A stretch of DNA of 64,000 nt, taken from the NCBI GenBank assembly GCA_002269645.1, contig NIVC01000505.1, positions 1 through 64,000 on the forward strand, read 5' to 3'. The translations under genes were made by a program, and so were the position numbers. This DNA is from Macrostomum lignano (taxonomy: Eukaryota). Shown piece by piece: positions 3,486 through 62,984 of the stretch. The stretch's first letter is position 1. Every line of letters begins with the position of its first letter. A model generated the notes under the pieces. The model was not told where the DNA came from and did not search any database. It saw only the letters and a program-made list of their open reading frames with translations.

Positions 3486-3754
3486 CTGCAATTACAATTC
3501 AGTCTGTTACCTAGTCTAGTCTATTACCTATGGATCTAGTCTTTTTACTAATCAGTCACCCGTACGGCTCGTATTCATTCGAGATATTGTCCCTTTTGTT
3601 GAGAAATTTTAAAATGATTGCATTTTAAATGTCACTTTGAGGGGCCTGAATGAATCTCGTTGGGCAGTTGATCCACGATATTTGCATGAGTGAAAAGCAC
3701 TGTATAGCAATAAAACTTCTACTACGAGCTACATGTAGTAGTTAACACTCAGTG

Positions 3755-4604
3755 CAGGGGCGTCGCCACCTGGGGACAGAGGGGGGGGGGACATGTCCCC
3801 CCCAGTAAAAGCAACTCCAATTTGTGACCCGATGTGGAAATCAATAATTTTGTTTCAGGGCAACAAACGGAGTGTCCGTGGCGCCAAAATGAGTGCCTGT
3901 CTGTGGCGTCAAAATGAGTGCCTGTCTGTGGCGTCAAAATGAGTGCCTGTCTGTGGCGCCAAAATGAATGCCTGTCTGTGGCGCCAAAATTAATGCCTGT
4001 CTGTGGCACCAAAATGAGTGCCTGTCTGTGGCGCCAAAATGAGTGCCTGTCTGTGGCGCCAAAATGAATGCCTGTCTGTGGCGCCAAAATGAGTGCCTGT
4101 CTGTGGCGCCAAAATGAGAGGCGCCAAAATGAGTGCCTGTCTGTGGCTTCAAAATGAATGCCTGTCTGTGGCGCCAAAATGAATGCCTGTCTGTGGCGCC
4201 AAAATGAATGCCTGTCTGTGGCGCCAAAATGAATGCCTGTCTGTGGCACCAAAATGAGTGCCTGTCTGTGGCGCCAAAATGAATGCCTGTCTGTGGCGCC
4301 AAAATGAGTGCCTGTCTGTGGCGCCAAAATGAGAGGCGCCAAAATGAGTGCCTGTCTGTGGCGTCAAAATGAATGCCTGTCTGTGGCGCCAAAATTAATG
4401 CCTGTCTGTGGCGCCAAAATGAGTGCCTGTCTGTGGCGCCAAAATGAGAGGCGCCAAAATGAGTGCCTGTCTGTAGCGCCAAAATGAGCGCTGAAAACAC
4501 CGATTCGCAAAAAAATGAACTTGTAGGAGTCTAGTCATGTACAGTGTACATGTGAATATCTTGGCTTTGTCGTTCCCCCACCATCATAAAATCCTTGGCG
4601 ACGC
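3755..4604 (-). mobile_element. Non-autonomous element (MITE-like) with an internal 25-bp minisatellite (copy 1)
   Basis: Ends caggggcgtcgcca (3755) and tggcgacgc (4604), with a GGGGGACATGTCCCCC palindrome. Both unique flanks and the repeat array match 51205-52289 in opposite orientation. Confidence 0.75.
3880..4490. repeat. 25-bp tandem minisatellite GGCGCCAAAATGAGTGCCTGTCTGT (~24 copies)
   Basis: Directly visible head-to-tail units with point variants and no spacers. Confidence 0.97.
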
Positions 4605-4607
4605 ATA

Positions 4608-4911
4608 GAGGTCTGCAAACTTTTTACTTCTCAAGGGCTAGATAAAGAATCCAGCTCATGGCTGACGGTCAGATGGGAGAGGAAAGTAGAAGAGAAGACG
4701 AGAGAGGGGATTAGAGAGAAGATAAGAGGCAAGGCGAGAAAAGATGAAAGGTGAGGGAAAAGGATAGAGAAGAGAGGAGATAGAAGAAAGAGGAGAGAGT
4801 AGAGAGCTGAAAAGAAACAGGCCAAATTGTTATTGTGAAGTTTTAAAGGACCTGCTGGCTGGATAGAGGGGCTTCACAGGCCGCATGTGCTTTGCGTGTT
4901 GGAGTTTGCCG
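4608..4911 (+). mobile_element. hAT/Charlie-type MITE with GA-rich core (copy A)
   Basis: Left end agaggtctgcaaactttt...aagggctaga and right end gccgcatgtg...ggagtttgccg. The subterminal block ttattgtgaagttttaaagg is shared with 55005-55595, 59410-59706, 61640-61762 and, more loosely, 62706-62930. Confidence 0.65.
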
Positions 4912-5405
4912 AGAAATGGTCTCTAGCCTAAAAAACTAGTCTTGTTTCTTTTTATTATTTTTAATTTGCTTCAAAAGGTGCATTGATTTTAAGTGCTGCA
5001 GGCCTCCCTCGTGATTGCAATCTCAATGTCCGAGGGGGGCCGTTCTGTTTCGGGCATAACAATTCCAATAGGAGAGGCAGGCCAAGGGTTGCAGACAGAG
5101 TGGACAACCGGCTGCAGCGTATGAAGGCGGGGGATGGCAAAGCGCATTTGGAAATTGCAGACGTCAAAAATGCCAGTCTGTCTGCTTCTGCGTTTGTGTA
5201 TTGCTCGATCTAGCATTGGAACGTTGGGTCAGTTGGCCTATCTTCCTACGAGAAAAATATTAATAGATAGAGGGATGTATACATGTACCTAGATACACAG
5301 TACTCTGCTACAATCTAATACAACAGGTTGTCTTTTTTCTATAGTAGATATGTAGGTTTTCACTTTAATGTTGCTTTTGCATGCTGATTTTTTGTGGGTT
5401 ACGCC

Positions 5406-7170
<1,765 letters not shown>

Positions 7171-7193
7171 GAGTAGCAGCAGAGTAGACTCAC

Positions 7194-7281
7194 CCTACTA
7201 ATCCTGGGGGCCCGTCGCTGCCGCTGTCGAAACTTGTGAAAATAATTCGCCGACATTGTCGTTGCTGTTGTTGTGCTAAAC
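7194..7281 (-). CDS. DVL: Dishevelled 88-nt exon (basic region, RFSTTTATTMSANYFHKFRQRQRRAPRISR)
   Basis: Acceptor ttaacgcag|G and donor AGG|gtgagt. Phases (2 in, 0 out) link the SSDLDTTSFFDSEDEAESSR exon to the ASSFSSIT exon, matching the Dvl RFSS...basic...RASSFSSIT layout. Confidence 0.9.
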
Positions 7282-8428
7282 CTGCGTTAAGAGATTTGGT
7301 TTTTTGAGTTTATAGTCCAGGTGTTTCGCAGGTTTTGAGCATTTTATAGTACTTGTAAGGACCGCTTGAAGTTAGGATTGTCTCAGGACCGAACACTTAC
7401 TTCAAGGTCAAAGTTAGGTTAAAAATTCACTATATTTTTAACACTAGATAACATTGTCAACATATTTGCTTCAAAGTTTCGAATATGCGTGTTTACCCAG
7501 CATGTCTGATCGATTCGTGTTGATTTACAACTTAAAACCTACATGTAATTCAAACATGTCGGAAGTGGGAAAAGCAAAGATGCAGTGTCTTCTAATTGAA
7601 GAATGACCTACCACAAGCTTGGGACGAGAAAGCTTTGACGTTAACAATACGGAAAAAGGAGATCGCTGAAAGAATCAAGAATGAAGATCATTTTGCTTCA
7701 GTTCTGTGCGTTCGACCGTCTCCAGTAAGCGTTTGTCCTAAATTTAACCTTCATGTGATCATCGTAATCGCAGAACTTAAGAGATGAATCGTACATACAT
7801 GAAGTGCTTAAAATGTAGAGTGCTACGTTCTGATACAGCCGTACTCATAACTTTTTGATCCATGAGTACGGGTTACTACTCCTAGGAAGAAAAATAGCAT
7901 TTTGGCGCGAGTTGACTAGAAACTTAAAGCCGTTTCATACCACAAGCGTAAAATTTCGAAAAAAAGGTTTTTCTCTATTTATTCCTATCCCAGAGAAAAC
8001 GGCCATGCATCATTCGAGCCATAAATTTCCAGGCCACAGCCCAAAAATTTTGTTTTGCCCAACGCAAACCGGCCTACTTGCTGTGCCTGCTAAAAGCGAA
8101 ATTGCCCACTCCTCTCTATGTTTATATACTGCACTGACGGCCTCCTCTCCACTGCTGCTGTAAATTTAACTTTCTCCCCAATTCATTTCTTAACTGAAAA
8201 AGCAACACCCCATCTAACTATCTCGTAGCTGCCTTGAAAAGCTGTAGCAAAAGGTACTGTACTGATATCTTTAAAACGGTTACTTTTCCTGGTTTATGAA
8301 GGCTAGAAGTTTATACCCATATTGTTATAGTATAAACTGTTAGTAGCCACATGCAGACGGATGATATAATCTTATACTTTCTAAGATTTACATTAAAATT
8401 TTCTAATTGAGATAAAAAATATGCGCAC

Positions 8429-9030
8429 CTGGATGATTCAGCTTCATCTTCCGAATCAAAGAAGCTGGTGGTGTCAAGATCGCTGCTTAGTATTGATCCG
8501 GCTGTTTCGTACAGCTGCTGCTGTTGCTGGCGCCCGCCTTGCAGCTGCAGGCCGCCAACCCGAGGTCTGTGATTGGGCACGAATGCGTGGTACAGGTGCG
8601 CTAGACGATCTGGTCGAATAAACTGCGGCTTTCTATGCTGACCCATCAACAGTCTGCGATTGCTTGATGAAGCTTGCTGCTGCTGCTGCTGCTGCTGCTT
8701 TTGCTGTTGCTGCTTTTGCTGCAGAAGCAGTCGCGACTGAGACTTTTGTGGCTGCTGCTGCTGTTGCTGCTGCTGCTGTCTCTGTTGCGTCCATGTAACG
8801 AGCGGCTGCCTAGCATTCGACTTTTGAAAACTGGAAAACGGTTCGCTAGACTGTCTACTGTGCTCAGCGCCCGAGCTGGTCGCAGCCACCGATGCGCCAA
8901 CTAAATTGCGATCTCCGTTGCTTCCGGTAGCTCCCGGTCTGATTGAGGCGCCATTGCTTGCGCCTCCTCCGCTGGCCACTTGTTGCTGTGAGACACTGTG
9001 AGACAGAGGCAGCCCGGTCTGATGATTCAT
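8429..9030 (-). CDS. DVL: Dishevelled exon (Q-rich linker ending in SSDLDTTSFFDSEDEAESSR); 5' boundary uncertain
   Basis: SSDLDTTSFFDSEDE matches the conserved Dvl SSELESSSF.DSDED motif. Donor AG|gtgcgc at 8429/8428 is phase-compatible with the 7281 acceptor. Confidence 0.85.
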
Positions 9031-12847: not shown

Positions 12848-13168
12848 ATTCCAGCGTTGGCCGCCGAGGCTTTGTGCAGCGCGTCCAATTTGAACTGGCC
12901 GGTTGCTATCGAATTGAAATTTCTGGCGCCAGAGGCGGAGGGTCAGATTGTTGCGGCAAGATCGGGGGTAACGGTTCCGCCATCGCTGGAAGCTTCGTTA
13001 TTGGTGCTGGCACAGCTTTGAGTGTCGTTGTTGGACAGGCGGGCACCACCGCGACAAGCGACTCTGCTAGCGGCGGAGGCGGCGGCGGCAGCTTTGTGTA
13101 CCGAGCAAACGACAGCGGATTGCTGATGGCGGCCGGCGGTGGCGGCGGTGCCTCGTCTATGTTTGATG
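12848..13168 (+). CDS. Exon 2: ALK/LTK-type glycine-rich domain, first part
   Basis: Acceptor tttag|AT is phase-matched to exon 1. GCYRIEISGARGG...GGNGSAIAGSF...LSVVVGQAG...GGGGGGSFVY...LLMAAGGGGGA is the ALK/LTK Gly-rich pattern. The 3' boundary is uncertain (G|gaaagt). Confidence 0.75.
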
Positions 13169-13808
13169 GAAAGTTTCTTTGGGTCTTTACTTTACTGGGG
13201 TCTTCGCTTTTTTCCATACTGTTTAGCTACGGAGATTGAATGAGAGCTGAGAAATCCTGCTTTAAATTAAAACAGTGTTTTAAAAAAGCTCGAGGTTTTT
13301 CACTTGAAAAAAATGTGACGAGCTTGGTGTAGCTTTTATGATTCTGCCTCTACAGACAGCCATCAGATACTACGAGCTAGATGCTAGATCGTCGTTAGTT
13401 TTAGCAACCAGTGATGAAATAATAGCAAAATCGACTGTAGCACACATTGCTGACAGCATATTTTATCGTCACTTAAGTGTTACAATAAAAGCCTAGTGCA
13501 AGCATAAACCATCTTTGAATACAGACCGCCTGTGAACTCTAAAAAGACGCTACGGCACTCTGTAATGAACTATAGGTCTTTACAGCTTGCAACAATGTTG
13601 TGCGTAAGATCAAGTGAAGCCACAGAAAACGTCACAAAAACGTTTTCTCAATTTTATGTCATTCTTTTTCACTGATTTTGACGGTCAAAAAACGTCGAAA
13701 CTTCAAGAGGACTATAAACAGTATTTGAAATTTTGCTAGTAAAAATATTGCAAAAGGTGCTAAAATCACTCGTCTCAAATAAAAAAATTTGTCATCTCAA
13801 AACTCTAG

Positions 13809-14317
13809 GCTTGAACGCTCTACACAAAGTCTACGGCAGCAACTCGTACGGTGGCATCAGCAACTCTTCGACTATACTAACCACGGGATTCGGTGGCAAC
13901 CTTGGGAGTCCCGGATACAACAATCCAAGCGCTACACCAAACGACCAGTTCCATGGCGGCTGTGGCGCCGGCTGGCTTGGTACGGCACACAATCCAAGGA
14001 GAAGCTCCAGCGACGGTGATAGTGGCGGCAGTCTGGCCAAAGGCTGGACTGGTGGTGTCTCTGGAGACGGCAACATCGGTGACGGCGGCTTCGGCGGCGG
14101 CGGCGGTAGCGGTGGCTTCGACAAGCCTAGCAAGTACGGAGCAGCCGGCGGCGGTGGTGGTTTCAGCGGAGGCGGGGCCGGGGTGAACAATATCGAGGCC
14201 GGAGGCGGCGGCGGCTCCTACTGCGGTGGTAGCCGCTGCGAGTTCGCTGAGGCTTCGCCCACAGAACATGGTCAAGTTGTGCTACAGCTTCTGACTCCGT
14301 TTGTGGATACTTGCTAG
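13809..14317 (+). CDS. Exon 3: ALK/LTK-type glycine-rich domain, C-terminal part; no TM or kinase
   Basis: Acceptor ctctag|GC. Reads GGCGAGW...GGFGGGGGSG...GGGGGFSGGGAG...AGGGGGSYC...HGQVVLQLL, then stop. Confidence 0.75.
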
Positions 14318-15234
14318 TTGGAAATTGAAGGTTTAGAATTCGCTTGCAAAACAAAAATTACTATAAAACACACTCAACCAGCATATATTCTAATCGACCT
14401 TTTCTGTTTATCACGTTTATACGAGTAAAGCTAACGATGATCCCAGTTGTTGACTGTCTCTAGTCTTTATCTCTGTCTCTTTTTTCAGCAAGTATTTATT
14501 AGAACATACTTCTACCGGTAACTATATGCATTCGGCTGGAGAAGTTAATGAGTCTTACATGTGTTTTACGAGGAACGTACCATAAACAGCGCAATAGTGG
14601 CTATTCTGTATTTATCAAACAATATAATTCAGATTGTAAGAAATAGACATTCTGGTCAGCTAATTCAAAACTAACTCGTACAAGTTTCTGATTTTTAAAG
14701 TTAATAAAATTAAAAACCAGCGGCTTTAGGGAAGTTGACAAATTTTGTTTTAACAAAACCATTTTTACATCCAAATAGCCACTACGAAACAAAGAAGCCC
14801 AAAATAGACTTCTTTGCGATTACTCTTTTAGTAGCAAGAAAAGCTTAATGGACTTCAAAACTTAACTTGATATGGTCCGAGATTCTGTATAAAAATCTAA
14901 TATCATCCAACTTTCGATTTGAATTTTTACTTTGAAATGTTAAATATATAATTTGCTGACGGAACTGGGACAAGGCTAAAAACTAATATACTTATATCTT
15001 ATGCTAATGGCTTTGTGCTAGAATACAGCTTCAGCTTCCATGAAAACAACAACACAGCAACAAAGTACACTGGATAGTCTCTAGTGTCACAGGGCGCGTC
15101 TCAAGGCCAGGGTGCGAACATAGGCTGCTCCCCCGGCAGAGTCCGGGGCGCCAGCGTCAGCCAGCAGACAGTCGACGAAATGCCGAGTGCGCGCCTGTCC
15201 TCGCCGGTAGGGTGCCTGCATCGTCAGCGGCAGC

Positions 15235-16400
15235 GTTAGCCATCAGAATTTCATGAAAAGCAAATTATGAGGCAACTGAGTGCAGTTCAGGGTCAGCTGT
15301 TTGCTGTCATTAAGTTTATTTTTAAGAGGTACTTACCGCTCCTTCTGGACACACATGGACTAAAGGCTTATCATGCAAAGACTCTGATGTTCTTTATGCT
15401 TGAGAAGCACAGAACTAGTTAGTACCTTAGCTTGGAAGTTCCAAAATTTGATCGTTCTACTAAAAGAGGCACTAGACATGATGGTGTCATAATGGACTCA
15501 AGCAGCTTACCTGATGAGTGCATGCCGCACTTTTTAACTTCTGACGTTCCATTCTACTTTAAGAATGCTGGAATCGGCCGTGACTTTGACAACACAAAAA
15601 CGAGGGTTCGAGACCGACTTAGCGAGCTTTGAAGAGATGTCAGTGAAGTGGTCGAGCAGCTAAGAAAACTCGTGAGACCGCTGCAGTCAGAGAAATTTTA
15701 CTTTTAGCCATTCACTCTGCTTCCACTGAGGACTTTATTTGATGTCGCTCAGATCAGAGAAGCAACTGATGAGGAGGAGCACTATTTAAAGTACGCTGAT
15801 GTATACAGGTTGGTCAACAATTGTATTAGTGAATTGCAGTCAGAGTCAAACAACAGAGACACTCTTCTAGATGCAAAGTCTCGTTGTTGGAGGCAGCTGA
15901 ATCTTTTGCACTCGCTGCAGTGGTGCCAGTGCGCCACCCTATGCTTGACCGCAATTGCGCATCTCAAATTTGGAGAATTTGAGCAGGCTGTGAACTTGTT
16001 AAAACAGCTTCAGATGCAGGATATTACACTAGGCTTGATGCCAAATGAAACTAAATGGATTCAATGGACAAGTCTACCCACTGAATCAGACTGGGCGTGG
16101 AGATTCTGCCTTCCTTGTGACTGTCCGCCTCTCTTCCCTTACCTACCTGAGTTTACTCAGACTCTGTTGACAGCGAGGTTATTGCAGCCTCGCTCCTCCC
16201 ATCTGTACGTGAACTTCCGCTGCCTGAGCTGGAGTCTTCAAGCGGAACTGCTGCACGATTGCTCACCGATCAATTTTGACCCGTGGTTGGATGAGTTGAA
16301 AGAAGACCCAGACTTGGAGGAGCTGCTCACTCTTGCCCACTAAAGCGACTGCCGCGACCACGTAGAGTTCTGTGTAGCGACAGATGACAGAGATCGGAGA
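15235..16400 (+). pseudogene. cGAS/Mab-21-like (cGLR) pseudogene, paralogue of the 26660-28086 exon
   Basis: Colinear with the intact paralogue: HEKQIMRQLSAVQGQLFAVIKFIFK...GLKAYHAKTLMFFMLEK; ECMPHFL...YFKNAG; PFTLLPL; DWAWRFCLP; HLYVNFRCLSWSLQAELL; EDPDLEELLTLAH*SDC. In-frame stops at ~15420, 15630, ~15705 and 16341, plus small indels. No GS/DxD exon seen. Confidence 0.85.
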
Positions 16401-17923: not shown

Positions 17924-19374
17924 ATGGCCTACCAAATTTCGATGCAAAAATCGCTCGCGGCAGCTGCCATTCGAGCCAAAGACTCGCGTCGACTTCTACC
18001 GATCTGCCAAGAGATGAAGTCGAATTTCATTCTCACTATCGACCGTTTCGAACAGTCGGTGGCTCACCATATTGCGTGCTTGCCTAAAAACTGTCTCTGC
18101 TGCCTTGAGGCTCTTACTTCTAGGCTTGGACCCGACTGCCTCACCTGCTTGAACAAATTAAACAATACTCCGGTGCATCTAGCCGCTCTATACCAAGACG
18201 AGTCGTGGATGAGGTTTGCCCACCAACTCGTTGGAAGTGACTGCTTCTATCAGACGGGCAACAACGGTCGCAACGCTTTTCACAATGCCGCCTTAAATGA
18301 AGTGACAAATTCTGTTCTTAAGTGGCTTGTTGAGCAATGCGGTGTCGATTGTTTATCTGTTCGCGACCAATTCGGCAATACTCCAATACATCTCGCCGCT
18401 TTGAAGCAGGATGAGGATTCATTGCATCTCTTCCAGACAATCCTAGGATGCGACTGCTTTAGTCAGTCTAATAGCAGCAACCAGAATGCTGTTCACTTTG
18501 CTGCTATGAATGTACGGCAAAGTTCTTCCCTCAAAATGTTGGTCTCACTTCTTGGTTCGTCCTGCTTATTGACTAAAGACTCAAATGATGCGACCCCTGT
18601 CCATTTGGCTGCTCAATATCAAGATGTGGACTCGCTCCGCTTCATCTTCAATTCATTGGATTGCTCAGCATTCAATCTCGTCGATGTTAGCGGAAAGACT
18701 TTGGCCGACTATGCGCAAGAAAACACTCTGCACGGGGAGCAGATACTGCAGTTAATCGTTGAAATAAAGGAAACACAGTCGGAGCAGCAGTCCGAACCGA
18801 TACAAGAGATGGCCTGCTTGCAAATGCAGAAGCAAACGGAGCAGCAGCAGCAAGAAGAACAGCAGCAAGAAAAACAGGAGGAGCAGCAGGAGCAGAAACA
18901 GGATGAGCAGCAGGAGCAAAAACAGGAGGAGCAGCAGGAGCAGAAACAGGAGGAGCAGCAGGAGCAAAAACAGGAGGAGCAGCAGGAGCAAAAACAGGAG
19001 GAGCAGCAGGAGCAAAAACAGGAGGAGCAGCAGGAGCAGAAACAGGAGGAGCAGCAGGAGCAGGAGCAAAAACAGCAGGAGCAGCAGCAGGAGCAAAAAC
19101 AGGATGAGCAGCAGGAGCAAAAACAGGAGGAGCAGCAGGAGCAGAAACAGGAGGAGCAGCAGGAGCAAAAACAGGAGGAGCAGCAGGAGCAGGAGCAAAA
19201 ACAGGAGGAGCAGCAGGAGCAGAAACAGGAGGAGCAGCAGGAGCAGGAGCAAAAACAGCAGGAGCAGCAGCAGGAGCAAAAACAAGAGGAGCAGCAGGAG
19301 CAGAAACAGGAGGAGCAGCAATATGAAGCCAAAGAAGACCGGAGTCCTGCGTCCAATCGGAACTCCTTAGTTAG
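17924..19374 (+). CDS. Exon 1 of an ankyrin-repeat / Q-E-repeat / Ser-Thr kinase gene
   Basis: About 6 ankyrin repeats (NNTPVHLAA, GRNAFHNAA, GNTPIHLAA, NQNAVHFAA, DATPVHLAA, GKTLADYA), then a KQEEQQEQ repeat. Donor AG|gtttgt at 19374/19375 is phase-matched to 19517. Confidence 0.85.
18839..19320 (+). repeat. Coding 24-bp tandem repeat (KQEEQQEQ)n, ~20 units
   Basis: Visible AAACAGGAGGAGCAGCAGGAGCA(A/G) units within the 17924 reading frame. Confidence 0.95.
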
Positions 19375-19516
19375 GTTTGTACTCGTATTTGGTGTGTACT
19401 GAAAATGCAACCAATAACGCATATTACAGATGCGTTACAAGTTCAGAAGAAAATTTGCTGTAAATAAGTTTTTTCATGAACAAGCCTAAATAATTCCGTT
19501 TTACATATTTATTCAG

Positions 19517-23504: not shown

Positions 23505-24281
23505 TTGCATATACGACACGCTTCGATTAAACTTCATACGTTCGTAAATAAAGTGCCTGAAAACCTGACAAGTGCGCTTGACGATTGTCCAAAAGGAGTG
23601 GATGCCTTTCTGATTGTCCTGAGATACGATGTCAGGGCGACTGAGGAAGAACTAAATGCTGCCAATGATGCAGTAAAATGTTTTGGCCCAAAAGCCTTTA
23701 AAAGAGCGATCATTGTCTTCACGCATTGTGAAAAGCTTAATGGCGACAAGAGAGGCTTTCAAGAATATCTGAAAAATAAACTATGCCCTGCGATTCCCAA
23801 GTTCAGAGAGCTGCTGTCGAAAGTGGGCGATAGGGTCACCATGCTGAGTAATGACAAGAGCGCTGCCAACTTCGAGTTAAGACAGCAGCAGATCAATGAC
23901 CTGTTAGAACTAATCGATGAAGTTGCACAGCACAACAAAAAGCGCTTCAAAAAAACGGATCAGGAAACTGAGTCAGATGCGCAAAACCAGATGGTGATGA
24001 TTTCTGACGCTCTTCGCCAGACCCAGCAACTGCAAGTGGCACAGCAGTCGCAGATCCAACAAATGCAACAAATGTTGATGATTAAGATGATGCTGGAAAT
24101 GCACGCTCGTGAGTTCGGTATGGCAATGGAGGTACAACGCATGAGAATGCGAGAAACATTGGAACAGGAGCTAAGAAATCAAAGGTTGGAAATGCAATAT
24201 CAGCAACGAAGGGAAATCGAAGTCCACGTACATGAAAGAGAGAGAGAGAGGGCGACTGCTCTATTCTATAATCGATTTTAG
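23505..24281 (+). CDS. AIG1/GIMAP-family GTPase-like ORF (C-terminal half of the G domain + Q/E/R-rich coiled coil); P-loop not found
   Basis: CPKGVDAFLIVLRYDVRATEEE...FGPKAFKRAIIVFTHCEKL...FRELLSKVGDRV...QINDLLELIDEV matches the AIG1 C-terminal half. A degenerate IYDT (G3-like) lies in another frame at ~23510. Confidence 0.7.
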   Translation: MHIRHASIKLHTFVNKVPENLTSALDDCPKGVDAFLIVLRYDVRATEEELNAANDAVKCFGPKAFKRAIIVFTHCEKLNGDKRGFQEYLKNKLCPAIPKFRELLSKVGDRVTMLSNDKSAANFELRQQQINDLLELIDEVAQHNKKRFKKTDQETESDAQNQMVMISDALRQTQQLQVAQQSQIQQMQQMLMIKMMLEMHAREFGMAMEVQRMRMRETLEQELRNQRLEMQYQQRREIEVHVHERERERATALFYNRF

Positions 24282-26659: not shown

Positions 26660-28086
26660 CTACAGACTGTCACATTGAATTTCCAACTCACTGCTGACGT
26701 TTGACTTCTCAGCCTGAAGCATCTCAAGCTTTTTCGCAATAACCTCGAGTTTTTTTCGATCCCGAATAGTCATCGAAAGGCTGCCGTCCTTCTCCCTAAT
26801 GGTAGCTTGTTCCAAACTGAACTGGAGATGCTCCGGACAGTCACTGTAATGAGCCAGGACTAGCAGCTCTTCTAGATCGGCGTCTTCTTGCATCTCATCG
26901 TACCAATCTTGAACGTTGTAATCGTTTTTCTGAAGCAGCTCAGCTTGCAGGCTCCAGCCAATGCAACGGAAATTAAAGTACAAATGTGAGGCCCCAGCAG
27001 CTGAAAGCCTTGCTGAGATGAGAGAACCAGTGATGGCCGGTAAGAAGTGAAACTGAGCCTCTTTTAGGCTGGGAATGCAGAATCTCCAGGCCCAATCGGG
27101 ACCACGATCGTCAAGCAGGCTTGCTGTAAGGCTTCCACTTGAACTCCACGCTCTTTGCACCCTATGACTGACAAGTTGTTGCGCTAACCTGGCTGCTTCA
27201 GCTCGATTTGACTGTCTTAACAGGGCTATTATTGTCAGGCACATCCGCGTACATTGAAATACCTCTGGTAGTGAATTTAGCCTAGAAAGTAGAAGGTCGA
27301 TTAGACAAGTTTCTGATTGAAGATCATGGATGCACCTTTGAACTGTTCGATAGGCTTTTAAGAGCTTTGTCGTGCTGGTTGGATCTACGTTGGAGACTGA
27401 GTTTGGCTGACCGGTCAGTGGCAGCAGAGTGAACGGGTGAAAGAAGAAGCAATTTGAAGTGAGCGTATCGACATGATTTCGGATGGAATCGACAACAAGG
27501 TTTACGTCATTTCGCAGCTTCGACAAGAAACGTCTAACTTTTGATTTAGTAGAATTAAAGTCTCCACAAGTTGTGCCAGCATTCTTAAAGTAAAGTGAAA
27601 CGTTTTCCATAAAGAAGTGCGGCATGCAAACGTCCCGAGAATGGCTCCAATCAAGAAACTGAAGCATGAGATCCAGAGACTCCTTGAGCAAGGTAACAAT
27701 GTTGAAGCTTTGCCAAGCAGTAGTATCAGAGCTATACTTCTCCATCATAAAGAAAAGCAAGGTTTTTGCGTGATAGGTTTTCAGCCCTCGCGTATTGAAT
27801 TCTTTTGGTAGCTGATGCTTAAATATGAATTTGAGGAGAATGAACAATTGGCCTTGAATTGAGTTCAAGCTCCTCATAATTTGCTTCTCGTGCAGGCTGA
27901 AGCTAATCCTCAATTCGTTTGATTTATTGGGTCTATAAGCTCTGACTAGATGCACATTGACTGGCTGAGGGATGATTAACTGACGAATTTTCTCTTCGCA
28001 AAGGCTGCTACAGCATGGAAACGCTTGGCATGTGTCCTGGGCTGGTCGAACGCCGCATCCGTCAATTCTCACAGCCGGATTGCCAC
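26660..28086 (-). CDS. Exon 3 of repeat-ankyrin-cGLR: Mab-21/cGAS C-lobe and helical C-terminal extension
   Basis: Acceptor aacttcag|GT (phase 1). QDTCQA is the candidate third acidic residue. VHLV...ELRISFSLHEK...GQLFILLKFIFK...LKTYHAKTLLF...CMPHFF is the Mab-21 signature. Confidence 0.88.
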
Positions 28087-29208
28087 CTGAAGTTAGCAGA
28101 TTGCATTTAATTTTATACGATTTTCAGCGCACGGGTGGGTGTATTTTGATGCCTGACTTTGTTTTCAGATAAAATTAAAATTAACAGAAGCTCACAGAAG
28201 GCACGATAAAATAAGAAAACAGCCATGGTATAGTGTGCTAATTTAAATTGAACAACAATACTTTTAGTTGTCGGTTTGAGATCCTTCACAAATTATTTTC
28301 TATAGCTATCTCCAAAGTGGGAGCGTATAACTCGTTATTTGTGTATTATTTTGCCGCCAGCTGTTTATTTAATCTATGCTCTTGATCTCTAACTGTAATT
28401 TCATGTGTTTTATTTGCTCCATGGCCCGACCAAGAAGTTATGAGCAGCAGGCAATCCCGAATATCTCTTTAGTTCTTCTTTGACTTCGAAAGGTACGAAA
28501 TATGCGAGTACAAACTGTCAGTCTCTCGGTTTTTAATTGTCAACAACCGAAGGACAGAATTTTCTCAGTTTTTTGTTTTAAATTTTCGGTTTTCACGCAC
28601 CAGGTTAAAATTTAATGTACCGATCGACTTCTGGTTGCAAATTAAGCTAGTAGCTACGAGCTACAAGTAAGCGGTTTCCTTCAATGTTGTTTAAGAAGTT
28701 TCTTCGACATAAACAACTGAATTACGAGTAGAAATAAGCTAGACTTTTCTCTTAGAAAGTTTTCGTAGAGCTGGAGGCCGATAAGGAACGTATACTCCTC
28801 AGAACCTTAAAAAATGTAAATCTACAACCAGAGAACGGATAAATTCGGTCAAAAAAACTTGCATTGAAAACACCCGATATATAGTGGCCTAGTAGTTCAG
28901 TTGTCTATGCGGGTAAGCAAGCAAAGTTTCGCTGAAGTTTAATTTAGTCGTTACACAAAGTAAATTTTTGTGAAATTTTTGCACATAAAAACTGTATTTT
29001 TTACGCTTTCACTTATTTAGTTTGATAAACTTTGGATAAAGCACGTACGACGTACTTGCTTCATTTTCACTCACAGTTCTCGAGTACAGTGTCATTTTAA
29101 TCAAGTTTTCTGGGTAGTTCGAAAGTGACTTAACTTTCTTTCGTTTTATGTCGATACAATCGAAATCTTGAACTTTCAAAGACAATTCTGAATTGAGTTC
29201 GAACTTAC

Positions 29209-29570
29209 CAACGATAGTTGATACTTGTGTATGACCATCCACCAATGTTAGTCTAGCGACGCCTGCGCATTTACAGCCGCCTTCAAGATGGAATAATTCG
29301 TCACCAGCAATTACGGTCCAGTCGATGTCAGAGTCTGACGCTATTTTTCCATTCAAATGTTTTAAACTGAAGCCCCAGCCTTCAGAGTAGCTTCCAGTCA
29401 TGTATCGTGATTCCTGCGTGAATGCCTGAACTAATTCTTCCAGCGAATCAGCAACCTCATGTTGAAAATGTACCCTGGTGAGCTTGAAGCCAGCATTGTT
29501 GAGCAGACGATGCAGATCTTCGCTCAGTCTCTCATCAACTTGTTGTTCCTCAGCTAGAAGTTTCGCGAAT
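29209..29570 (-). CDS. Exon 2 of repeat-ankyrin-cGLR: nucleotidyltransferase catalytic motif
   Basis: Acceptor ttcttaag|A and donor G|gtaagt. Open throughout: FAKLLAEEQ...YMTGSYSEGWG...DSDIDWTV, i.e. GS...DxD. Confidence 0.88.
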
Positions 29571-29812
29571 CTTAAGAATAGAGCAAAAATGAAAATTGAG
29601 TTTCAAATCAAGTTAACCCTGTAATACCGCAAAATTCTATTTAAAACTGAATAGAATACACACTTACTTTGGTTGAGTAACTTGTAACTCAGTTTCTTGT
29701 CTGTACTGCTTCCTTTCGTCTGTAATCCTATGGAAGAAATGAGGATATTCGAAACATTGCAGCACTTTAAATTGCCTATAATTATTGTTGATTTAATCAA
29801 GGTTTAACTTAC

Positions 29813-31983
29813 AACGCAATCGAACCAATATGATGTTGAAGTTTTTCAAGCACATCAAAATGTTGGAATTGTTCAGCCAACTGAGCACAGCTCTGTCCGT
29901 TCCGGTCACGATGTTCGATGTCTGATCTGCTATCGATCAACGCCATGGCAACTCGAATATGACCAGCAATGCAGGCTCGAGACAACGCAGTCCTACCGAA
30001 CTCGTCCTGAACACTTACCGATGCGCCTTGAGCGAGTAGATGCTCTGCTAATTCGCACTGTCCAGAATCTGCGGCTAGCATTAGCGACGTGCTGCTCGAA
30101 TCGATCGGTTCGTCAATTTGTTTCAAGTGTTGCAGCAGGTTAAATACTATTGGAACGTAGCCATCCGAGATGCACTTGGCCATAACTGGTGCAGGAATTT
30201 TATTCTCATTTGAGCAGCTTATTGCGCTGCGCACTAAATCGTGCAGCATCCTGTCTTCAAAAATGAATTCGCAATTTTCGGGACTGAAAATCTGCTTTAT
30301 TTTGTTTCGACCAGCGAATTGTAGAATGCCTAAAACAAAATTCCAATGGCCATGCGAGATTGCAACCTTTACGACCTCAATGCAGCAAAGGTTTTTGCTA
30401 GCTTCGCAACTAATAACTAGAAGCAAACGTTTGACCACTTCAATTTGGCTTCTTGCTGCAGCGACTTTAGCTGCCTCTGTGCAGAGCTTCTCTTTAGCCG
30501 TTTGGTCTGAAACTTCTTGCACCATGCTGATCACCATATCCCACGAGCGCTGCCGGGTGGCCGTCTCGACCAAGCGAATCCAGCAGGCGTCCCTGGTGCT
30601 TGGTTCACTGATGTTCCTAGCAGCAGCCTGAGCTTGCTCCCAGCTGGGCCGAGTGTATCTAGCTGCAATCATTGCCAAGTCGGCGCTGCATTGATCCTTC
30701 AGTGGAAGTTCGCTGATTGTTGTCCTGGCTAGGTTAGCCATCTCCCAGTTGCAGTTATGGGCTGCTGCTTTGGCGGATTCAATGCAGGTGAATATAACAA
30801 TGCCTTTGTCTTTTATTTCCGCTAGAAAATAATTAAATTCAGCTGACGCGCCCCAACAAGCGGCAAACTCTGCAGCGCTGCTGCAGGCATGGCTTCGAAC
30901 CGATTGATCTGCTATCAGACCCGCTGTGTACTTACTCGTCTTCCAGTCTCCTACAGAAGCAGCAGATTTCATGATTCCAGAGCAGCACTCATCTTTCAGA
31001 TTTGTGTCAGAAATACTTTTGAGTTGCTGCCTAATAAATTCTGGTTTACTAAACTCGGAAGCGGATCTGGTCAAAATGGAAACGCGTAGTTCTTCCTGTA
31101 GACGTTGATCAGAAATTGTTGGTAATAATTGGTGCACAACATTCCGATGGCCTTGAGATGCTGCGGCTTTAATAGAGTTACTGCAGCATTGGTCCTTATG
31201 ATTAGGATCCGAGATGATGCTCAGAATGCTGGACACAACTTCGGCATAGCCTTGACTAGCAACATAGGAACAAATCTTATTACAGCAATCGAGCCTCACG
31301 TTCTCATCAACTATGGATTTAACGAGGCCAATAACTGTAGTCCACTGGCTCTGGAACTTCGCCGGCCATTCAATGTCCTCGAGGCGAATGTCACTTGATT
31401 TCTCCTTGTCAGTCAATAAGTTAACGTACGCAGCCATCTTGTCACGACAGTGTGACGCCGCTGATGCGGCCGCTTTGCGACAAAATTCATCTCTGGCGTT
31501 CGGATCGGACATGAGGTGGACTAGATTAGTGACTAAGCTCCAGCGATCTTTCTCGCTTGCAGACATTGCTGCAATAATGCACACGGAATCCCGAATTTTC
31601 AAATCTGAAACGAGTTTAACAACTCTCAAGGCCGTTCTTTTCTCGCCCCACTTGGCTGCCCGTTGAGCCAATTCAGAGACGCACTGCAGCTTCAGGTCTT
31701 CATTTTGAATGATCGTTATTACGCGAATGGCCACGGCCCATTGGCAATTTATGGCTAGCGTTCTAACCGCGACTGCGCAACGATGATTTCTCGTACTTCT
31801 ATTGTCGATAGCTACTAAGAACTGGGCCATAGATTCCCAGCGACAGTTCCGTTGCGAAATAACTATCAGCTCTAGTAGAAACTCGTCCATATCTTCAGCG
31901 TTCAGTTTCTGATTGACTGACAAAACATTGACAAACTGTCTAGCCATGAAAGCGTCTCCGTTTTCAGCTGCGGATCGAGCCAT
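29813..31983 (-). CDS. Exon 1 of repeat-ankyrin-cGLR: ~15 helical 33-aa repeats + 3-4 ankyrin repeats
   Basis: Repeats ISD...kD.CC..aa..AA..G.W..v..l, then TSLMLAADSGQCELAEHLLAQGASVSVQDEFGRTALSRACIAGH...DRNGQSCAQLA. The ORF's stop lies inside the donor TT|gtaagt (29813/29812), phase-matched to exon 2. Confidence 0.85.
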
Positions 31984-34195: not shown

Positions 34196-35935
34196 CCGGG
34201 TACGCAAAAAGTATCTGGACACTTGCATGTGTTGCAGAGAAGGACAGATAAATATGCACGTGTTGTACCCAAAATCAATGAATTTTCACATCGCAACTTA
34301 ATGCAACAAATTGTCGTAGCTCGTTTTTCAGCAAAGTGGCCAACGCAACAGGTCGGTCTATTTTCACCTGGAAAGGTTATAATGGCTTAATTAAAGGTAG
34401 ATGACGTAAATCGCGAAATTTCAAGCTCGTGTTCCATTTAACAACGTAAAAACGAATTTTTCTAAAATGCGAACAAGAGAAACGTAACGCGGGCATTGAG
34501 CAACAAAAGTGAAACTTAATTTAAAGAAGCGGTCGCTTTTTCTAACAGAGTTCAAGATCGTCAGACTTCCTCGAATCAATCACCTGGCCCACTTGCTGCC
34601 ATGTGCTGCTCAAATGGTTCCAACAAGCGGCTCTGCATGCCAGACTCGATTTAATCCACGATTGGAGAACCTCCTTGGGCAATCACCTTCTCAAGACGAC
34701 CACGAAACGCTTTGCAGCATCTCACCAGATATTCCGGAGTCAGCTCTGATTCCCAAGCCTCATGAATGGCAGATCTCAGCGAGTCCAGGGACGTGTGGAA
34801 GCTTCTGCAGGCCCGCTTGTCAACCTGGTTCCAGATCGAAAAATCCAGGGGATTTAGATCAGGTGAGTAGGCTGGCCAGTCCTCCTTCAGCCAGACGCGC
34901 TTGCGCCCGAAGTGAGCGCTGAGCCAGGCCTGCACGTCATTGCGAGTGTGTGCTGGAGCCGAGTCCTGCTGGAAGCGAAAGTTCCAGCCATCTGCAAAAC
35001 TGCCATCCGGCCGCACCTTGTCGGGATAGTTACTGCGAATCCAGTGCAGCACTTTCTGGAGCACATCAAGGTACCCGTCTCCATTCAATCGGTACCCCTT
35101 GTCAAAAAATATTGGCTGCATTTTCTTGCCATCAGAAGCGACGAGGCCGAAGACCATGATGGTTGCTGGGTGCTTCATCTGTGGCGAGTTGAAGGCGTCC
35201 CGCTCCTCACTGCTCCTGGCCAGCACGCGCGAAGAGCTGCGATTCCGGTAGGGTGTCTGCGTGAAGTTCTTTTCATCCGTGAAGAAGATGACTTCAACTC
35301 CGGGAGAGGCCTTGAGGTCATTCAGGAGCCTCCGTGACCGTTGAACCCGAAGCCCCAGCTGATCCGCGTTCAGCATGGGGATCTCCCTCTGCACGAAGCT
35401 CCTGACGCCCATCTCGAAATGCATTGCGGACATTGCTCTCATGCACTCCTTCCTCTCGGGCAATTTGCCTCATCGTCTTCGTTGGGTCTTCTGCCCGCTT
35501 GGCTTCGAGGTTGGCCATGAAGTCTGGTGTCCGGACTGTCCGCGGCCGTCCCGATTTCTCCTTCGGTTCCAGGCTGTCGCCAGAATCCAGCAGCTTCTTC
35601 CAATCACCGACGGTGCTCTTACCTACTGAGTACTTCTCAGCACACATTCGCACGCTCATTCCAGAAGTCAAGTCGGTAGCGACGCTTCTTGAGATCCAAG
35701 GAATAGCTTGCCATTTTGTGACAACTTGGGGTGGCAAATCCGCGGATTGAAAACGAAGCTTTCGAAATAAAAGGATGAACAGCATGAGTCCATTTTGCAT
35801 ATCAGGGTTAAAATTCCAGGCAGAAGTTGGGCCATAGACATATTATACAAATGATGCTTTAAATTGCCGGAGTATGTCAAACTCTCGGAAAGCAAGGCCA
35901 ACAAGATTTTGTCCGGATACCTTTTGCGCACGAGG
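34196..35935 (-). mobile_element. Tc1/mariner-superfamily DNA transposon (maT-like), defective
   Basis: Imperfect 26-bp TIRs CCGGGTACGCAAAAAGTATCTGGACA (34196, preceded by TA) vs CCTCGTGCGCAAAAGGTATCCGGACA (reverse complement, ending 35935), 21/26 identical. Encloses a transposase. Confidence 0.9.
34651..35714 (-). pseudogene. Mariner-type DDD transposase with two frameshifts
   Basis: MASYSLDLKK (ATG 35714), then a shift to HTH regions ...SGRPRTVRT...MRQIARE. A second shift near 35415 leads to the catalytic FFTDEK / FQQDSAPAH / YSPDLNPLDFSIW. Confidence 0.88.
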
Positions 35936-59706: not shown

Positions 59707-60779
59707 CTCTAGCTAATTTAAAGTCTTGTGACGTTTCGGGATTCTTAGATACACACTAAAACACATCAGGTCACACTAATACCGCAAAATCGCATCAGTA
59801 CCTTACAGTGTAGTAATATACTTATTTGAAGTTTTTTAGATCTAGTTACCCGACGCAATAATTCTATAGAGATGTTGGCTGAGATTGCTTTAGATAAGTA
59901 TAGTCGGGTGTTTTCTATTCCATGTATCAATACCTAATTCCCATTAAAACTTTTTCTTCCTTTCCAAGGCCATTTGTTACAGTGTACGGTATAGAAGCAT
60001 GCGACATAATTTATTAGCATTGGAACAACTAAAAATTATGACTAAACGAGAGACTGGCATCGCTCTTTGTCACGTGATGCAGGGGTTTCATCGTGACCCG
60101 ACCAGCTGTTCCAGGGTTCTCTCCGAATAGCGGCTCGCTTTTTGAGTTCGAGTTTGAGTAATCGACTTAAGAGGTGGGAGAAAGAGACTCCCCTCGGGGG
60201 TTTTTAGGCTTGAAATATCCCCCATGTTAATGGGAAGATGGGTTAGGAAGGAATGAAGGAGTCTTTGTTCCTTAAAAGATTCTCTGCTAGTTGGACAAAG
60301 AGCATGAAAAATGAGCTTGAGTTTCTTTAGATCTTGCTGCAATTGAGATTATCCATCAATTTTTCAGTTTTGACTTTTTCGCTTGGGTCTCTGGGTTGGA
60401 ATTTTTAGTGACTGATTGGAGCCAAATGAAGTCTTGTCATTCACATCCCCCTTTTTCAGGATTCGTGTTAATTAATTATTTATTTAAAATCTGATTTTTC
60501 TGGGAGGGTCACGTTCGCGCGCGTGGGGCAATGGGGTGTCAAACGTTTCTTTTTTTGGGGGGGGGGCTTCTAACGAAGACTATAATCATGTTTTATCTAG
60601 GAAGTGATTAAGCTTTGTTTGCTCTTTGTTCTGTGTCTAATTTTGTGCATGGTATGGAGGTACTGATTTTTCCACAGGGTGCTGACCTGCTAGTCAGGTT
60701 GTCAATATCCAATGTACGAAATAATTTAATATTGTATTAATAAATTTCTGCGTGTTTCTTGCGTGTGTGTAAAGATTAA

Positions 60780-62705: not shown

Positions 62706-62930
62706 CAGGGGTCCTCCGGCCCGCTTACGGTTAGGGTCTTCTCTCTAATCTCCTGTCCTCTCTCATCTCCCCTCCCCCTTCTCTTCTCTCTTTGCTCCTC
62801 TCCCCTCCAGCCTCTCTCCCTTCCTCTCTCCTCTCCTCTCTCATCTTGCCTATCTCCTCTTCTTTCTTCCCTCCTCTCTCGTCTCTTTTCTCCCCTTTTC
62901 TCTCTATCGCTCTGGCCAACTGTTTTTCGA
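62706..62930 (-). mobile_element. Truncated hAT/Charlie-type MITE with CT-rich core (copy D)
   Basis: Starts caggggtcctccggcccgc, then a CT-rich core and ctctggcc. Confidence 0.5.
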
Positions 62931-62984
62931 CAGCTTCTATATTTAGCCCTTTAGTTAATTTTTCCCGATCCCCCCCCTAATCTA

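What the first reader, a model, noticed from the sequence alone, without database searches (positions are those of the whole stretch)
26660..31983. Hidden 1319-aa cGAS-like receptor fused to a long helical-repeat/ankyrin N-terminus
Seen: three ORFs the track lists separately are joined by canonical, phase-compatible introns. These are TT|gtaagt (29813) to ttcttaag|A (29570), and G|gtaagt (29209) to cttcag|GT (28086). Exons of 2171+362+1427 = 3960 nt form an uninterrupted 1319-aa frame. Order: ~15 x 33-aa repeats, 3-4 ankyrins, GSYSEG...DSDID, QDTCQA, Mab-21 helical lobe (RISFSLHEK, TYHAKT, MPHFF), and a helical tail. Established: cGAS/Mab-21-fold cGLRs use a GS...DxD...D triad to make cyclic dinucleotide second messengers in animal innate immunity. 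Inference: this enzyme may be gated by a large repeat solenoid acting as ligand sensor or autoinhibitor, rather than by direct nucleic-acid binding alone. That would be an NLR-like logic for a cGAS-fold enzyme. I cannot tell whether the architecture is already described.
Basis: partly seen in the sequence, partly recalled or inferred. Interest (0 to 1): 0.88.

Follow-up and report, generated by a model that had tools for sequence, protein, structure and literature searches.

The report
Flatworm ankyrin-repeat cGAS-like receptor gene
The three reading frames really do splice into one 1319-residue protein, a long ankyrin-repeat arm joined to a cGAS-like signalling enzyme. This design is already catalogued in the flatworm Macrostomum lignano, so this is a new family member, not a new kind of receptor.

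Summary
On the minus strand, exons 31983-29813, 29570-29209 and 28086-26660 join through GTAAGT...AG introns into an open 3960-nt, 1319-aa frame.

About 35 Macrostomum lignano proteins (44-55% identical) align without a break across both junctions. Intron 2 lies at the same aligned glycine codon and in the same phase as in an M. lignano gene.

The protein has four parts:
- About 16 degenerate 33-aa repeats. These are divergent ankyrin repeats, not a separate repeat type.
- Three to four canonical ankyrin repeats.
- A Mab21/cGAS-fold nucleotidyltransferase with G783-S784, D805-x-D807 and D862 intact.
- A family-specific C-terminal domain of about 250 aa.

The architecture is not new. Li et al. 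2023 list ANK-cGLR fusions, including M. lignano homologues. They screened five M. lignano constructs that begin downstream of the ankyrin region. None was labelled among their 15 active enzymes.

The idea that the solenoid gates the enzyme is plausible but untested. No NLR domain is present.

Verdict: a real, intact, probably functional gene and a new member of a known but functionally uncharacterised subfamily. A 5'-truncated pseudogene copy lies at 15.2-16.4 kb.

The parts
29813..31983 (-). Exon 1 (aa 1 to the second base of codon 724). It runs from the start ATG at 31983-31981 to the donor TT|GTAAGT. It encodes the whole ankyrin-type solenoid.
   Evidence: An in-frame TGA lies 9 nt upstream of the ATG. 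The N-terminus has the same style as M. lignano N-termini.
30319..31911 (-). About 16 degenerate 33-aa repeats (aa ~25-555) with consensus x-S-D-x-x-x-K-D-x-C-C-x-x-x-A-x-x-A-A-x-x-G-x-x-x-V-V-x-x-L-L. These are divergent ankyrin-type repeats.
   Evidence: Periodicity at 33/66/99. In-phase HMM copies. Mean pairwise identity is 19%. Pfam Ank_2 scores 23.1 bits here but 100 and 63 bits for the same repeat in P0044 and P0039.
29824..30183 (-). Canonical ankyrin block (aa ~601-720): one degenerate repeat plus three clear ones.
   Evidence: Pfam Ank_2 at aa 634-717, E 2.9e-17. AF2 shows four helix pairs. Foldseek matches DARPins with TMt 0.85 and rmsd 1.5.
29571..29812 (-). Intron 1 (242 nt, phase 2), GTAAGT...TTAAG.
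   Evidence: The M. lignano P0010 gene has phase-2 introns in the same variable linker.
29209..29570 (-). Exon 2 (aa 724-845). It encodes the spine helices, beta1 with the G783-S784 loop, and beta2 with D805-I-D807.
   Evidence: The conserved segment aa 725-780 has no ATG of its own, so it must be spliced to an upstream exon.
29390..29395 (-). Codons for G783-S784, the NTase 'hG[GS]' motif directly after beta1.
   Evidence: Invariant in A3. Aligned to the GS of molluscan cGLRs by hhalign. Follows AF2 strand 778-782.
29321..29329 (-). Codons for D805-I806-D807, the metal-binding [DE]h[DE] motif at the start of beta2.
   Evidence: D805 is invariant and D807 is at least 90% conserved in A3. Aligned to the SD.D motif of molluscan cGLRs.
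28087..29208 (-). Intron 2 (1122 nt, phase 1), GTAAGT...CTAACTTCAG.
   Evidence: Same aligned Gly codon and same phase as the last intron of M. lignano P0010.
26660..28086 (-). Exon 3 (aa 845-1319 plus the TAG stop at 26662-26660). It encodes the third catalytic Asp, the Mab21 C-lobe and the C-terminal domain.
28034..28036 (-). Codon for D862, the candidate third catalytic acid, at the first residue of a central beta-strand (RPAQ-D-TC).
   Evidence: AF2 strand 862-870. Conserved in most but not all family members. Aligned to the third-Asp region of molluscan cGLRs.
27590..27820 (-). Mab-21_C (HhH/H2TH-like) helical lobe, aa 934-1010, containing GLKTYHAKTLLF.
   Evidence: Pfam PF20266 scores 27.4 bits against a cut-off of 24.1. 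PDB sequence hits to cGAS and cGLR1 cover this region.
26663..27409 (-). Family-specific C-terminal domain (aa ~1071-1319): helical hairpins, a small beta-sheet and a long terminal helix. Conserved DWAWRFC, HLYxNFRC and D(P/A)DLEELL motifs.
   Evidence: Conserved in M. lignano. AF2 pLDDT is mostly 80-95, and pTM is 0.84 for NTase plus tail. No Pfam family matches and no PDB match covers it.
15222..16376 (+). A second, dead copy: a 5'-truncated pseudogene of the same family. It covers only the C-lobe and tail and lacks the catalytic half.
   Evidence: tblastn gives 61% identity to P0010 aa 353-729. At least 5 in-frame stops.

Best explanation
This is a single, intact three-exon gene of a macrostomid-type flatworm. 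It encodes an ankyrin-repeat cGAS-like receptor (ANK-cGLR).

Shown: the protein consists of an N-terminal solenoid of about 20 ankyrin-type repeats (16 degenerate plus 3-4 canonical), a short linker, a bilobed Mab21/cGAS nucleotidyltransferase with the GS, DxD and third-Asp motifs intact, and a conserved C-terminal domain of about 250 aa that the model packs against the enzyme. It belongs to a very large family that so far appears confined to Macrostomum.

Inferred mechanism: the enzyme core makes a nucleotide second messenger (a cyclic di- or oligonucleotide) from NTPs once it is activated. The ankyrin solenoid, possibly together with the C-terminal domain, acts as the regulatory or recognition module. 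It would bind a protein or other non-nucleic-acid ligand, or tether or autoinhibit the enzyme, so that activity is licensed by something other than plain dsDNA or dsRNA binding.
For: Gene model:
- The frame is open and the splice sites are canonical.
- Alignment with 26 M. lignano proteins is continuous across both junctions.
- Intron position and phase are conserved.
- The conserved helix segment aa 725-780 has no start codon of its own.

Fold and family:
- Pfam Mab-21_C scores above its cut-off.
- A family profile against PDB sequences returns cGAS (E 4e-6) and cGLR1 (E 7e-6) ahead of MAB21L1 (E 0.03).
- AF2 gives pLDDT 82 and pTM 0.84.
- Foldseek top hits are cGAS, MAB21L1, MB21D2 and Sp-cGLR1.
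- hhalign against molluscan cGLRs gives probability 98.2% and E 4e-14, with the GS, DxD and third-D columns aligned.

Active site:
- G783, S784 and D805 are invariant, D807 is at least 90% conserved, and D862 is present.
- The motifs sit at beta1/loop, beta2 and a central strand of the model.

Repeats are ankyrin-type.

Family size: 215 cluster representatives at E<1e-3 and 91 at E<1e-10. All 18 strong hits looked up (E at or below 2e-11) were M. lignano. The two weakest looked up (E about 4e-10 and 1e-7) were a tube worm and a bacterial metagenome bin.

Repeat arrays vary in number between paralogues. Some are recently amplified: P0044 repeats are 66% identical on average, and up to 97%.

Indirect support for regulation by something other than dsDNA/dsRNA:
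- The NTase core pI is 7.7, not strongly basic.
- Five M. lignano constructs that begin downstream of the ankyrin region were screened with dsDNA plus polyI:C. None is labelled among the 15 active enzymes in Li et al. Table S3.
Against: - There is no transcript evidence for this locus.
- No enzymatic data exist for any family member. 'Not labelled active' is not the same as 'inactive'.
- The sequence match to cGAS and cGLR covers only the C-lobe. The N-lobe match rests on profile-profile and fold comparison, with moderate TM scores (0.45-0.57) and high rmsd.
- D862 is replaced in some paralogues (P0033, P0041), so part of the family may be catalytically dead.
- The N-terminal repeats of this particular protein are degenerate (19% mutual identity, below the Pfam cut-off). 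That fits a structural arm as well as it fits a specific sensor.
- Whether the genome has STING or any other receptor for the product was not tested.
Confidence: 0.6

Rival explanations
1. A catalytically silent Mab21-type scaffold. Like MAB21L1 or MiD49/51, the NTase fold would be kept as a nucleotide-binding or purely structural module, and the protein would act as an ankyrin-based adaptor without making a second messenger.
For: Foldseek scores MAB21L1, MB21D2 and MiD51 almost as well as cGAS. No M. lignano construct is labelled among the active enzymes in the published screen. The third acidic residue is not universal in the family.
Against: This protein keeps GS, DxD and D862, and the first two are invariant or nearly so across divergent paralogues. 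That is not expected for a dead fold. According to Li et al., Mab21L1-3 lack a predicted functional active site. The sequence profile ranks cGAS and cGLR1 well above MAB21L1.
Confidence: 0.2
2. A nucleic-acid-activated cGLR like cGAS or Sp-cGLR1. The ankyrin array would serve only for localisation or oligomerisation and would not sense a ligand.
For: dsDNA and dsRNA are the only cGLR ligands known so far. Some paralogue cores are basic, with pI up to 9.2.
Against: The core pI here is 7.7 and the NTase plus tail is 6.4. The M. lignano constructs were not labelled active with dsDNA plus polyI:C. The C-terminal domain is modelled packed against the enzyme (pTM 0.84), but whether it covers the groove could not be checked.
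Confidence: 0.15
3. Two separate genes (an ankyrin-repeat gene ending at 29809 and a downstream NTase gene), or a decaying pseudogene, with the open spliced frame being coincidental.
For: The unspliced exon-1 frame does end in TAA at 29811-29809. A dead paralogue exists 10 kb away. There is no transcript data.
Against: The same ANK-linker-NTase order occurs in dozens of M. lignano gene models. Intron 2 is conserved in position and phase. The conserved aa 725-780 segment lacks any start codon. The 3960-nt frame is stop-free, whereas the true pseudogene has accumulated at least 5 stops in 1.2 kb.
Confidence: 0.05

Closest known systems
ANK-cGLR fusions of Macrostomum lignano, e.g. PAA68676.1 / BOX15_Mlig016402g1 (= P0012) and PAA62074.1 (= P0044); catalogued in Li et al. 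2023, Tables S2 and S3
   Same: Same domain order: 33-aa ankyrin-type repeats, canonical ANK, linker, Mab21 NTase, conserved C-terminal domain. Identity over NTase plus tail is 44-55%. The same GS / DSDID / RPAQD motifs are present. One intron is shared in position and phase.
   Different: No hit exceeds 55% identity, so this is a different species or an unannotated, divergent paralogue. The repeat array is longer than in most relatives (about 16 plus 4) and much more degenerate: 19% mutual identity against 66% in P0044. It lacks the 18-aa mini-exon in the linker.
Stylophora pistillata cGLRs, including ANK- and death-domain-fused ones, and Sp-cGLR1 (PDB 8GJY)
   Same: Animal cGLR fold. 8GJY is the best or second-best PDB sequence hit and a Foldseek hit. 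Li et al. report ANK fusion for three coral cGLRs.
   Different: Sequence identity is only about 16%. Sp-cGLR1 is a stand-alone dsRNA sensor. The flatworm C-terminal domain has no counterpart there.
Vertebrate cGAS
   Same: Bilobed Mab21 NTase with GS, [DE]x[DE] and a third Asp. Top Foldseek and profile hits.
   Different: There is no basic disordered N-terminus. A His/Cys cluster lies in the N-lobe insertion (H818, C823, C825, C869, C870), not at the place where I recall cGAS has its zinc thumb. The core pI is near neutral. The protein carries an ankyrin solenoid and an extra C-terminal domain.
MAB21L1 / MB21D2 / MiD51 (Mab21-fold proteins without a demonstrated second-messenger product)
   Same: Same fold, with Foldseek E-values from 5e-6 to 4e-3.
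   Different: According to Li et al., Mab21L1-3 lack a predicted functional active site. This protein keeps all the motifs.
NLR/STAND receptors with repeat sensors (functional analogy only); RNase L, whose ankyrin repeats bind 2-5A (from general knowledge)
   Same: A repeat solenoid joined to a signalling module. Repeat number varies between paralogues, and in some M. lignano paralogues the repeats are recently amplified.
   Different: There is no NACHT, NB-ARC or STAND ATPase. No evidence shows that the solenoid binds a ligand.

Membership tests
cGAS-like receptors (cGLR; Mab21-fold CD-NTases of animals) | Bilobed Mab21/cGAS nucleotidyltransferase fold | tested here: met
   Pfam Mab-21_C scores 27.4 bits against a cut-off of 24.1. 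AF2 gives pLDDT 82 and pTM 0.84. All 32 Foldseek PDB hits with E<=1e-3 are cGAS, MAB21L1, MB21D2 or Sp-cGLR1, with TMt 0.36-0.57. Profile against PDB sequences: cGAS E 4e-6.
cGAS-like receptors (cGLR) | Active-site motifs: hG[GS] after beta1, [DE]h[DE] on beta2, and a third acidic residue on a central strand | tested here: met
   G783-S784, D805-I-D807 and D862 are present. They are invariant or nearly invariant in the family, except D862, which is only mostly conserved. hhalign places them in the same columns as in molluscan cGLRs (probability 98.2%). They lie at the expected secondary-structure elements. Their 3-D convergence could not be measured because no coordinates were available.
cGAS-like receptors (cGLR) | Synthesis of a nucleotide second messenger on ligand recognition | not testable with these tools
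   This needs biochemistry. The published screen of five M. lignano homologues, as constructs beginning downstream of the ankyrin region, did not label any as active.
cGAS-like receptors (cGLR) | A cognate receptor (STING or other) in the same genome | not tested
   The window has no STING-like ORF among those scanned. The genome is not available, and literature searches gave nothing on Macrostomum STING.
ANK-cGLR fusion subclass (Li et al. 2023, Fig. 1C / S2A) | Ankyrin repeats and the cGLR NTase on one polypeptide | tested here: met
   Ank_2 at aa 634-717, E 2.9e-17. The spliced frame, continuous homologue alignment and conserved intron support a single polypeptide. Homologues are listed with Ank_2 in Table S2. 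Transcript proof is lacking for this locus.
Ankyrin repeat (for the N-terminal 33-aa units) | 33-residue helix-turn-helix repeat recognised by ankyrin profiles | tested here: inconclusive
   The period of 33 is clear. In the window protein Ank_2 reaches only 23.1 bits against a cut-off of 27.3 (E 1e-4). The homologous repeat in P0044 and P0039 scores 100 and 63 bits. No structure model of this part was made.
NLR / STAND receptors | Central NACHT or NB-ARC ATPase | tested here: not met
   The Pfam scan of the full protein shows no NTPase domain. 'NLR-like' is only an analogy.

The most novel reading that the evidence does not exclude
The ankyrin solenoid, with the family-specific C-terminal domain, would be the actual pattern- or effector-recognition module that licenses cGLR catalysis. 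This would be a repeat-gated, non-nucleic-acid-sensing cGLR. It would have diversified by repeat amplification into a very large receptor repertoire in macrostomid flatworms, within a phylum in which most members are reported to lack cGLRs. Some paralogues would be wired directly to caspase domains. That would explain why the published M. lignano constructs lacking the ankyrin region were not labelled active.
Probability: 0.25. Interest if true: 0.75.

Novelty: new member of a known kind. Interest (0 to 1): 0.35.

Why it matters
cGLRs are now seen as a major family of animal pattern-recognition receptors. Only dsDNA and dsRNA are known as ligands, and many family members appear inactive in vitro. 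Li et al. attribute this to unknown ligands.

The repeat-fused cGLRs (ANK, TPR) are the most obvious candidates for sensing something other than nucleic acid, and none has been characterised.

This locus adds a complete, intact ANK-cGLR with an unusually long repeat arm from a second macrostomid-type genome. Comparison with M. lignano shows which parts are constrained: the active-site motifs, the His/Cys cluster and the C-terminal domain. It also shows which parts are free to vary: the number and sequence of the repeats. That is useful for designing constructs.

On its own the locus is not a discovery of a new architecture.

Tried and rejected
1. The full-length protein as a query in the word-indexed search was swamped by generic ankyrin proteins. 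No self or family hit came back, and one of three searches was wasted.
2. The N-terminal 622 aa alone found nothing at E<=0.01. This is probably a limit of candidate selection, because tblastn of P0039 against the window aligns the arrays at 25% identity over 731 aa (E 5e-40 in that small search).
3. Foldseek with the model that included the ankyrin block returned only DARPins. A second model without the block was needed.
4. A single-sequence phmmer search against PDB gave only a marginal cGLR1 hit (E 0.024). A family profile was needed.
The source species therefore remains unidentified. I infer 'macrostomid-type flatworm' only because every strong hit looked up is M. lignano and none exceeds 61% identity.
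6. I searched for downstream ANK-caspase exons like those of P0048 and P0049. None is in the window.
7. Literature searches for Macrostomum with cGAS or STING found nothing beyond Li et al..
8. The two-genes and pseudogene readings were considered and rejected (see the rival explanations).
9. No Pfam family matches the C-terminal domain, and no PDB fold match covers it.

Full report

Yes. On the minus strand the three ORFs that a bacterial-style ORF list reports separately are 29809..31983 (724 aa), 29009..29401 and 26660..28072.

- Exon 1 (31983..29813) ends TT|GTAAGT.
- Exon 2 (29570..29209) follows ttcttaAG| and ends G|GTAAGT.
- Exon 3 (28086..26660) follows ctaacttcAG|.

The lengths 2171 + 362 + 1427 = 3960 nt translate into one stop-free 1319-aa protein. 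An in-frame TGA lies 9 nt upstream of the first ATG.

**2. Is the splicing more than a plausible reading?**

Three independent lines say so.

- Homologue alignment. A search with aa 725-1319 returned 35 proteins, all from the flatworm Macrostomum lignano. They are 44-55% identical over 94-97% of the query, and most carry Ank plus Mab-21_C Pfam domains. In the multiple alignment both exon junctions (aa 724/725 and 844/845) lie inside continuously aligned blocks.
- No independent start. The conserved segment encoded at the 5' end of exon 2 (aa 725-780, LSEDLHRLLNNAGF...) contains no ATG. The first Met of that ORF is M781, directly before the GS motif. An independent NTase gene starting there would lose conserved helices.
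- Conserved introns. I fetched the M. lignano gene for P0010 (NIVC01000085.1) and reconstructed its exons. Its last intron splits a Gly codon in phase 1 at ...TAGAG|SQPAV.... The window gene's intron 2 splits the aligned Gly845 in phase 1 at ...STIVG|GNPAV.... The linker introns are phase 2 in both genes. M. lignano has an extra 54-nt mini-exon.

There is no transcript evidence for this locus itself.

**3. What is the N-terminal part?**

BLOSUM autocorrelation over aa 1-620 peaks at lags 33, 66 and 99. An HMM built from six clear units finds in-phase copies from aa 91 to 555. A 33-residue register laid from aa 25 gives about 16 units.

The units are degenerate, with 19% mean mutual identity.

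They are not a separate class of 'helical repeats'. Pfam ankyrin models hit them in register but below threshold (Ank_2 23.1 bits against 27.3). The same repeat (KRDQCCIxAAxSAAxxGxxxVVKFLV) in the M. lignano relatives P0044 and P0039 scores Ank_2 at 100 and 63 bits. Li et al.'s Table S2 also annotates that region of PAA68676.1 as Ank_2.

A canonical ankyrin block follows at aa ~601-720. Pfam gives E 2.9e-17. The AF2 model shows four helix pairs, and Foldseek matches DARPins at rmsd 1.5 A.

The N-terminal arm is therefore about 20 ankyrin-type repeats.

**4. What is the enzyme part?**

- Pfam Mab-21_C is above its curated cut-off.
- A 10-sequence family profile searched against PDB sequences returns only cGAS (best E 4.4e-6) and cGLR1 of S. 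pistillata (6.6e-6). MAB21L1 follows at 0.03.
- An AF2 model of aa 725-1319 has pLDDT 82 and pTM 0.84.
- All 32 Foldseek hits in the PDB with E<=1e-3 are cGAS, MAB21L1, MB21D2 or Sp-cGLR1. MiD51 and a bacterial CD-NTase follow. TM scores normalised to the target are 0.45-0.57 for the full-length alignments.

The fold is secure. The superposition is only moderate, and the fold alone does not separate active cGLRs from inactive Mab21 proteins.

The active-site evidence is as follows. G783-S784 follows the first strand of the model. D805-I-D807 opens the second strand. D862 opens a central strand. G783, S784 and D805 are invariant and D807 is at least 90% conserved among divergent paralogues. D862 is present in most of them.

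Profile-profile comparison with five molluscan cGLRs taken from Li et al.'s Table S3 gives probability 98.2% and E 4e-14 over 278 columns. The GS, D.D and third-Asp columns are aligned.

Model coordinates were not exposed, so I could not measure the geometry.

**5. The C-terminal 250 residues**

Residues ~1071-1319 are conserved in the family, with DWAWRFC, HLYxNFRC..WSLQAELL and DxDLEELL motifs. They are confidently modelled as helical hairpins, a small sheet and a long terminal helix. They match no Pfam family, and no PDB fold match covers them. Their role is unknown.

**6. Family and taxon**

An exhaustive HMMER scan of 1.84 billion cluster representatives found 215 hits at E<1e-3 and 91 at E<1e-10. 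I looked up 20 of them. All 18 strong ones are M. lignano. The two weakest are a tube worm and a bacterial metagenome bin.

No hit exceeds 55% identity to the intact gene, or 61% to the pseudogene. The window is therefore not represented in the annotated M. lignano proteome. It most likely comes from a related macrostomid. This is an inference, and the species was not identified.

Paralogues differ widely in repeat number. Some arrays are recently amplified: P0044 units are 66% identical on average and up to 97%.

**7. Comparison with what is known**

Li et al. 2023 (bioRxiv 10.1101/2023.02.22.529553; my recollection is that it later appeared in Cell) state several relevant points.

- 87% of cGLRs are stand-alone enzymes, but some are fused to TPR or ankyrin repeats (Fig. 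1C, S2A).
- Their domain table lists several M. lignano PAA accessions with Ank_2.
- Their 140-protein screen includes five M. lignano proteins as constructs that begin downstream of the ankyrin region (rows 89-93). One is PAA68676.1, which is P0012 here. Another, PAA93208.1, looks by eye nearly identical to P0017.
- In those rows the column naming an active enzyme is empty. It is filled for Sp-cGLR1 and Cv-cGLR1.

The architecture is therefore already catalogued and homologues have been expressed. No function, ligand or product is known. 'Not labelled active' is not proof of inactivity.

**8. Mechanism**

Shown: one polypeptide joins an ankyrin solenoid to a cGAS-fold enzyme with intact catalytic motifs, and the family is large and fast-diversifying.

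Inferred: the core makes a nucleotide second messenger, and the ankyrin arm, possibly with the C-terminal domain, controls when.

Weak indirect support for a ligand other than nucleic acid:
- The core pI is near neutral (7.7), and the NTase plus tail is 6.4. Li et al. associate high pI with nucleic-acid sensing.
- The published M. lignano constructs lacking the ankyrin region were not labelled active with dsDNA plus polyI:C.

'NLR-like' is only an analogy, since no STAND ATPase is present.

The main rival is a catalytically silent Mab21 scaffold, which I put at about 0.2. A plain nucleic-acid sensor with a tethering arm is about 0.15. Two separate genes or a pseudogene is about 0.05.

**9. Verdict**

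The finding is real and correctly identified. It is a new member of a known, already catalogued subclass (ANK-cGLR), not a new architecture. Its value is as a comparative data point and a good candidate for the first functional test of a repeat-fused cGLR. Interest is 0.35.

Noticed in passing
window 15222-16376 (+): A 5'-truncated pseudogene of the same cGLR family. It covers only the C-lobe and C-terminal domain and is 61% identical to M. lignano P0010 aa 353-729. It has at least five in-frame stops and no catalytic half upstream.
   Followed up: yes
window 23505-24281 (+): An ORF with an AIG1/GIMAP-type GTPase domain (Pfam E 1.3e-19), about 2.4 kb from the 3' end of the cGLR gene. From general knowledge this is another gene type often linked to immunity, so the neighbourhood may be an immune-gene cluster.
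   Followed up: partly
window 17924-19402 (+): A 492-aa ORF with ankyrin repeats (Ank_2, E 5e-23) followed by a long (QEEQQEQK)n low-complexity tail. It shows no detectable relation to the cGLR's ankyrin arm.
   Followed up: partly
window 34651-35463 (-): A DDE_3 transposase-like ORF (28.4 bits, just under Pfam's 28.6 cut-off). It is probably a Tc1/mariner-type element remnant, about 2.7 kb upstream of the cGLR start.
   Followed up: no
window 2502-3491 and 8311-9030 (-); 12874-14317 (+): Exons of a Dishevelled gene (PDZ, start of DEP, Dishevelled-specific domain), and ORFs with an ALK/LTK glycine-rich domain. These are ordinary metazoan genes and confirm an animal origin for the window.
   Followed up: partly
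M. lignano proteins P0048 (PAA59752.1), P0201 (PAA80948.1), P0049 (PAA93319.1), P0045: Some annotated family members continue past the cGLR C-terminal domain into more ankyrin repeats and a caspase domain (Peptidase_C14, 90-96 bits). P0045 carries WSC and RING domains. If these are not merged gene models, they are cGLR-caspase fusions. I did not find them in the held text of Li et al.'s tables, though one file was cut. No such exons exist in the window.
   Followed up: partly
window 29284-29299 and 27998-28030 (-); aa H818, C823, C825, C864, C869, C870, C874: A His/Cys cluster in the insertion between beta2 and the D862 strand (H-x4-C-x-C ... CC). H818, C823, C825 and C870 are invariant and C869 is at least 90% conserved across ten divergent paralogues. 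It may be a zinc site, in a different place from where I recall the cGAS zinc thumb lies. The geometry was not checked.
   Followed up: no
window 4001-8000, 60001-64000: Blocks of extreme GC skew: +0.37 to +0.55 at 4-8 kb, +0.52 at 60-62 kb and -0.38 at 62-64 kb. Overlapping long ORFs on both strands at 5289-7256 suggest simple or low-complexity repeats.
   Followed up: no
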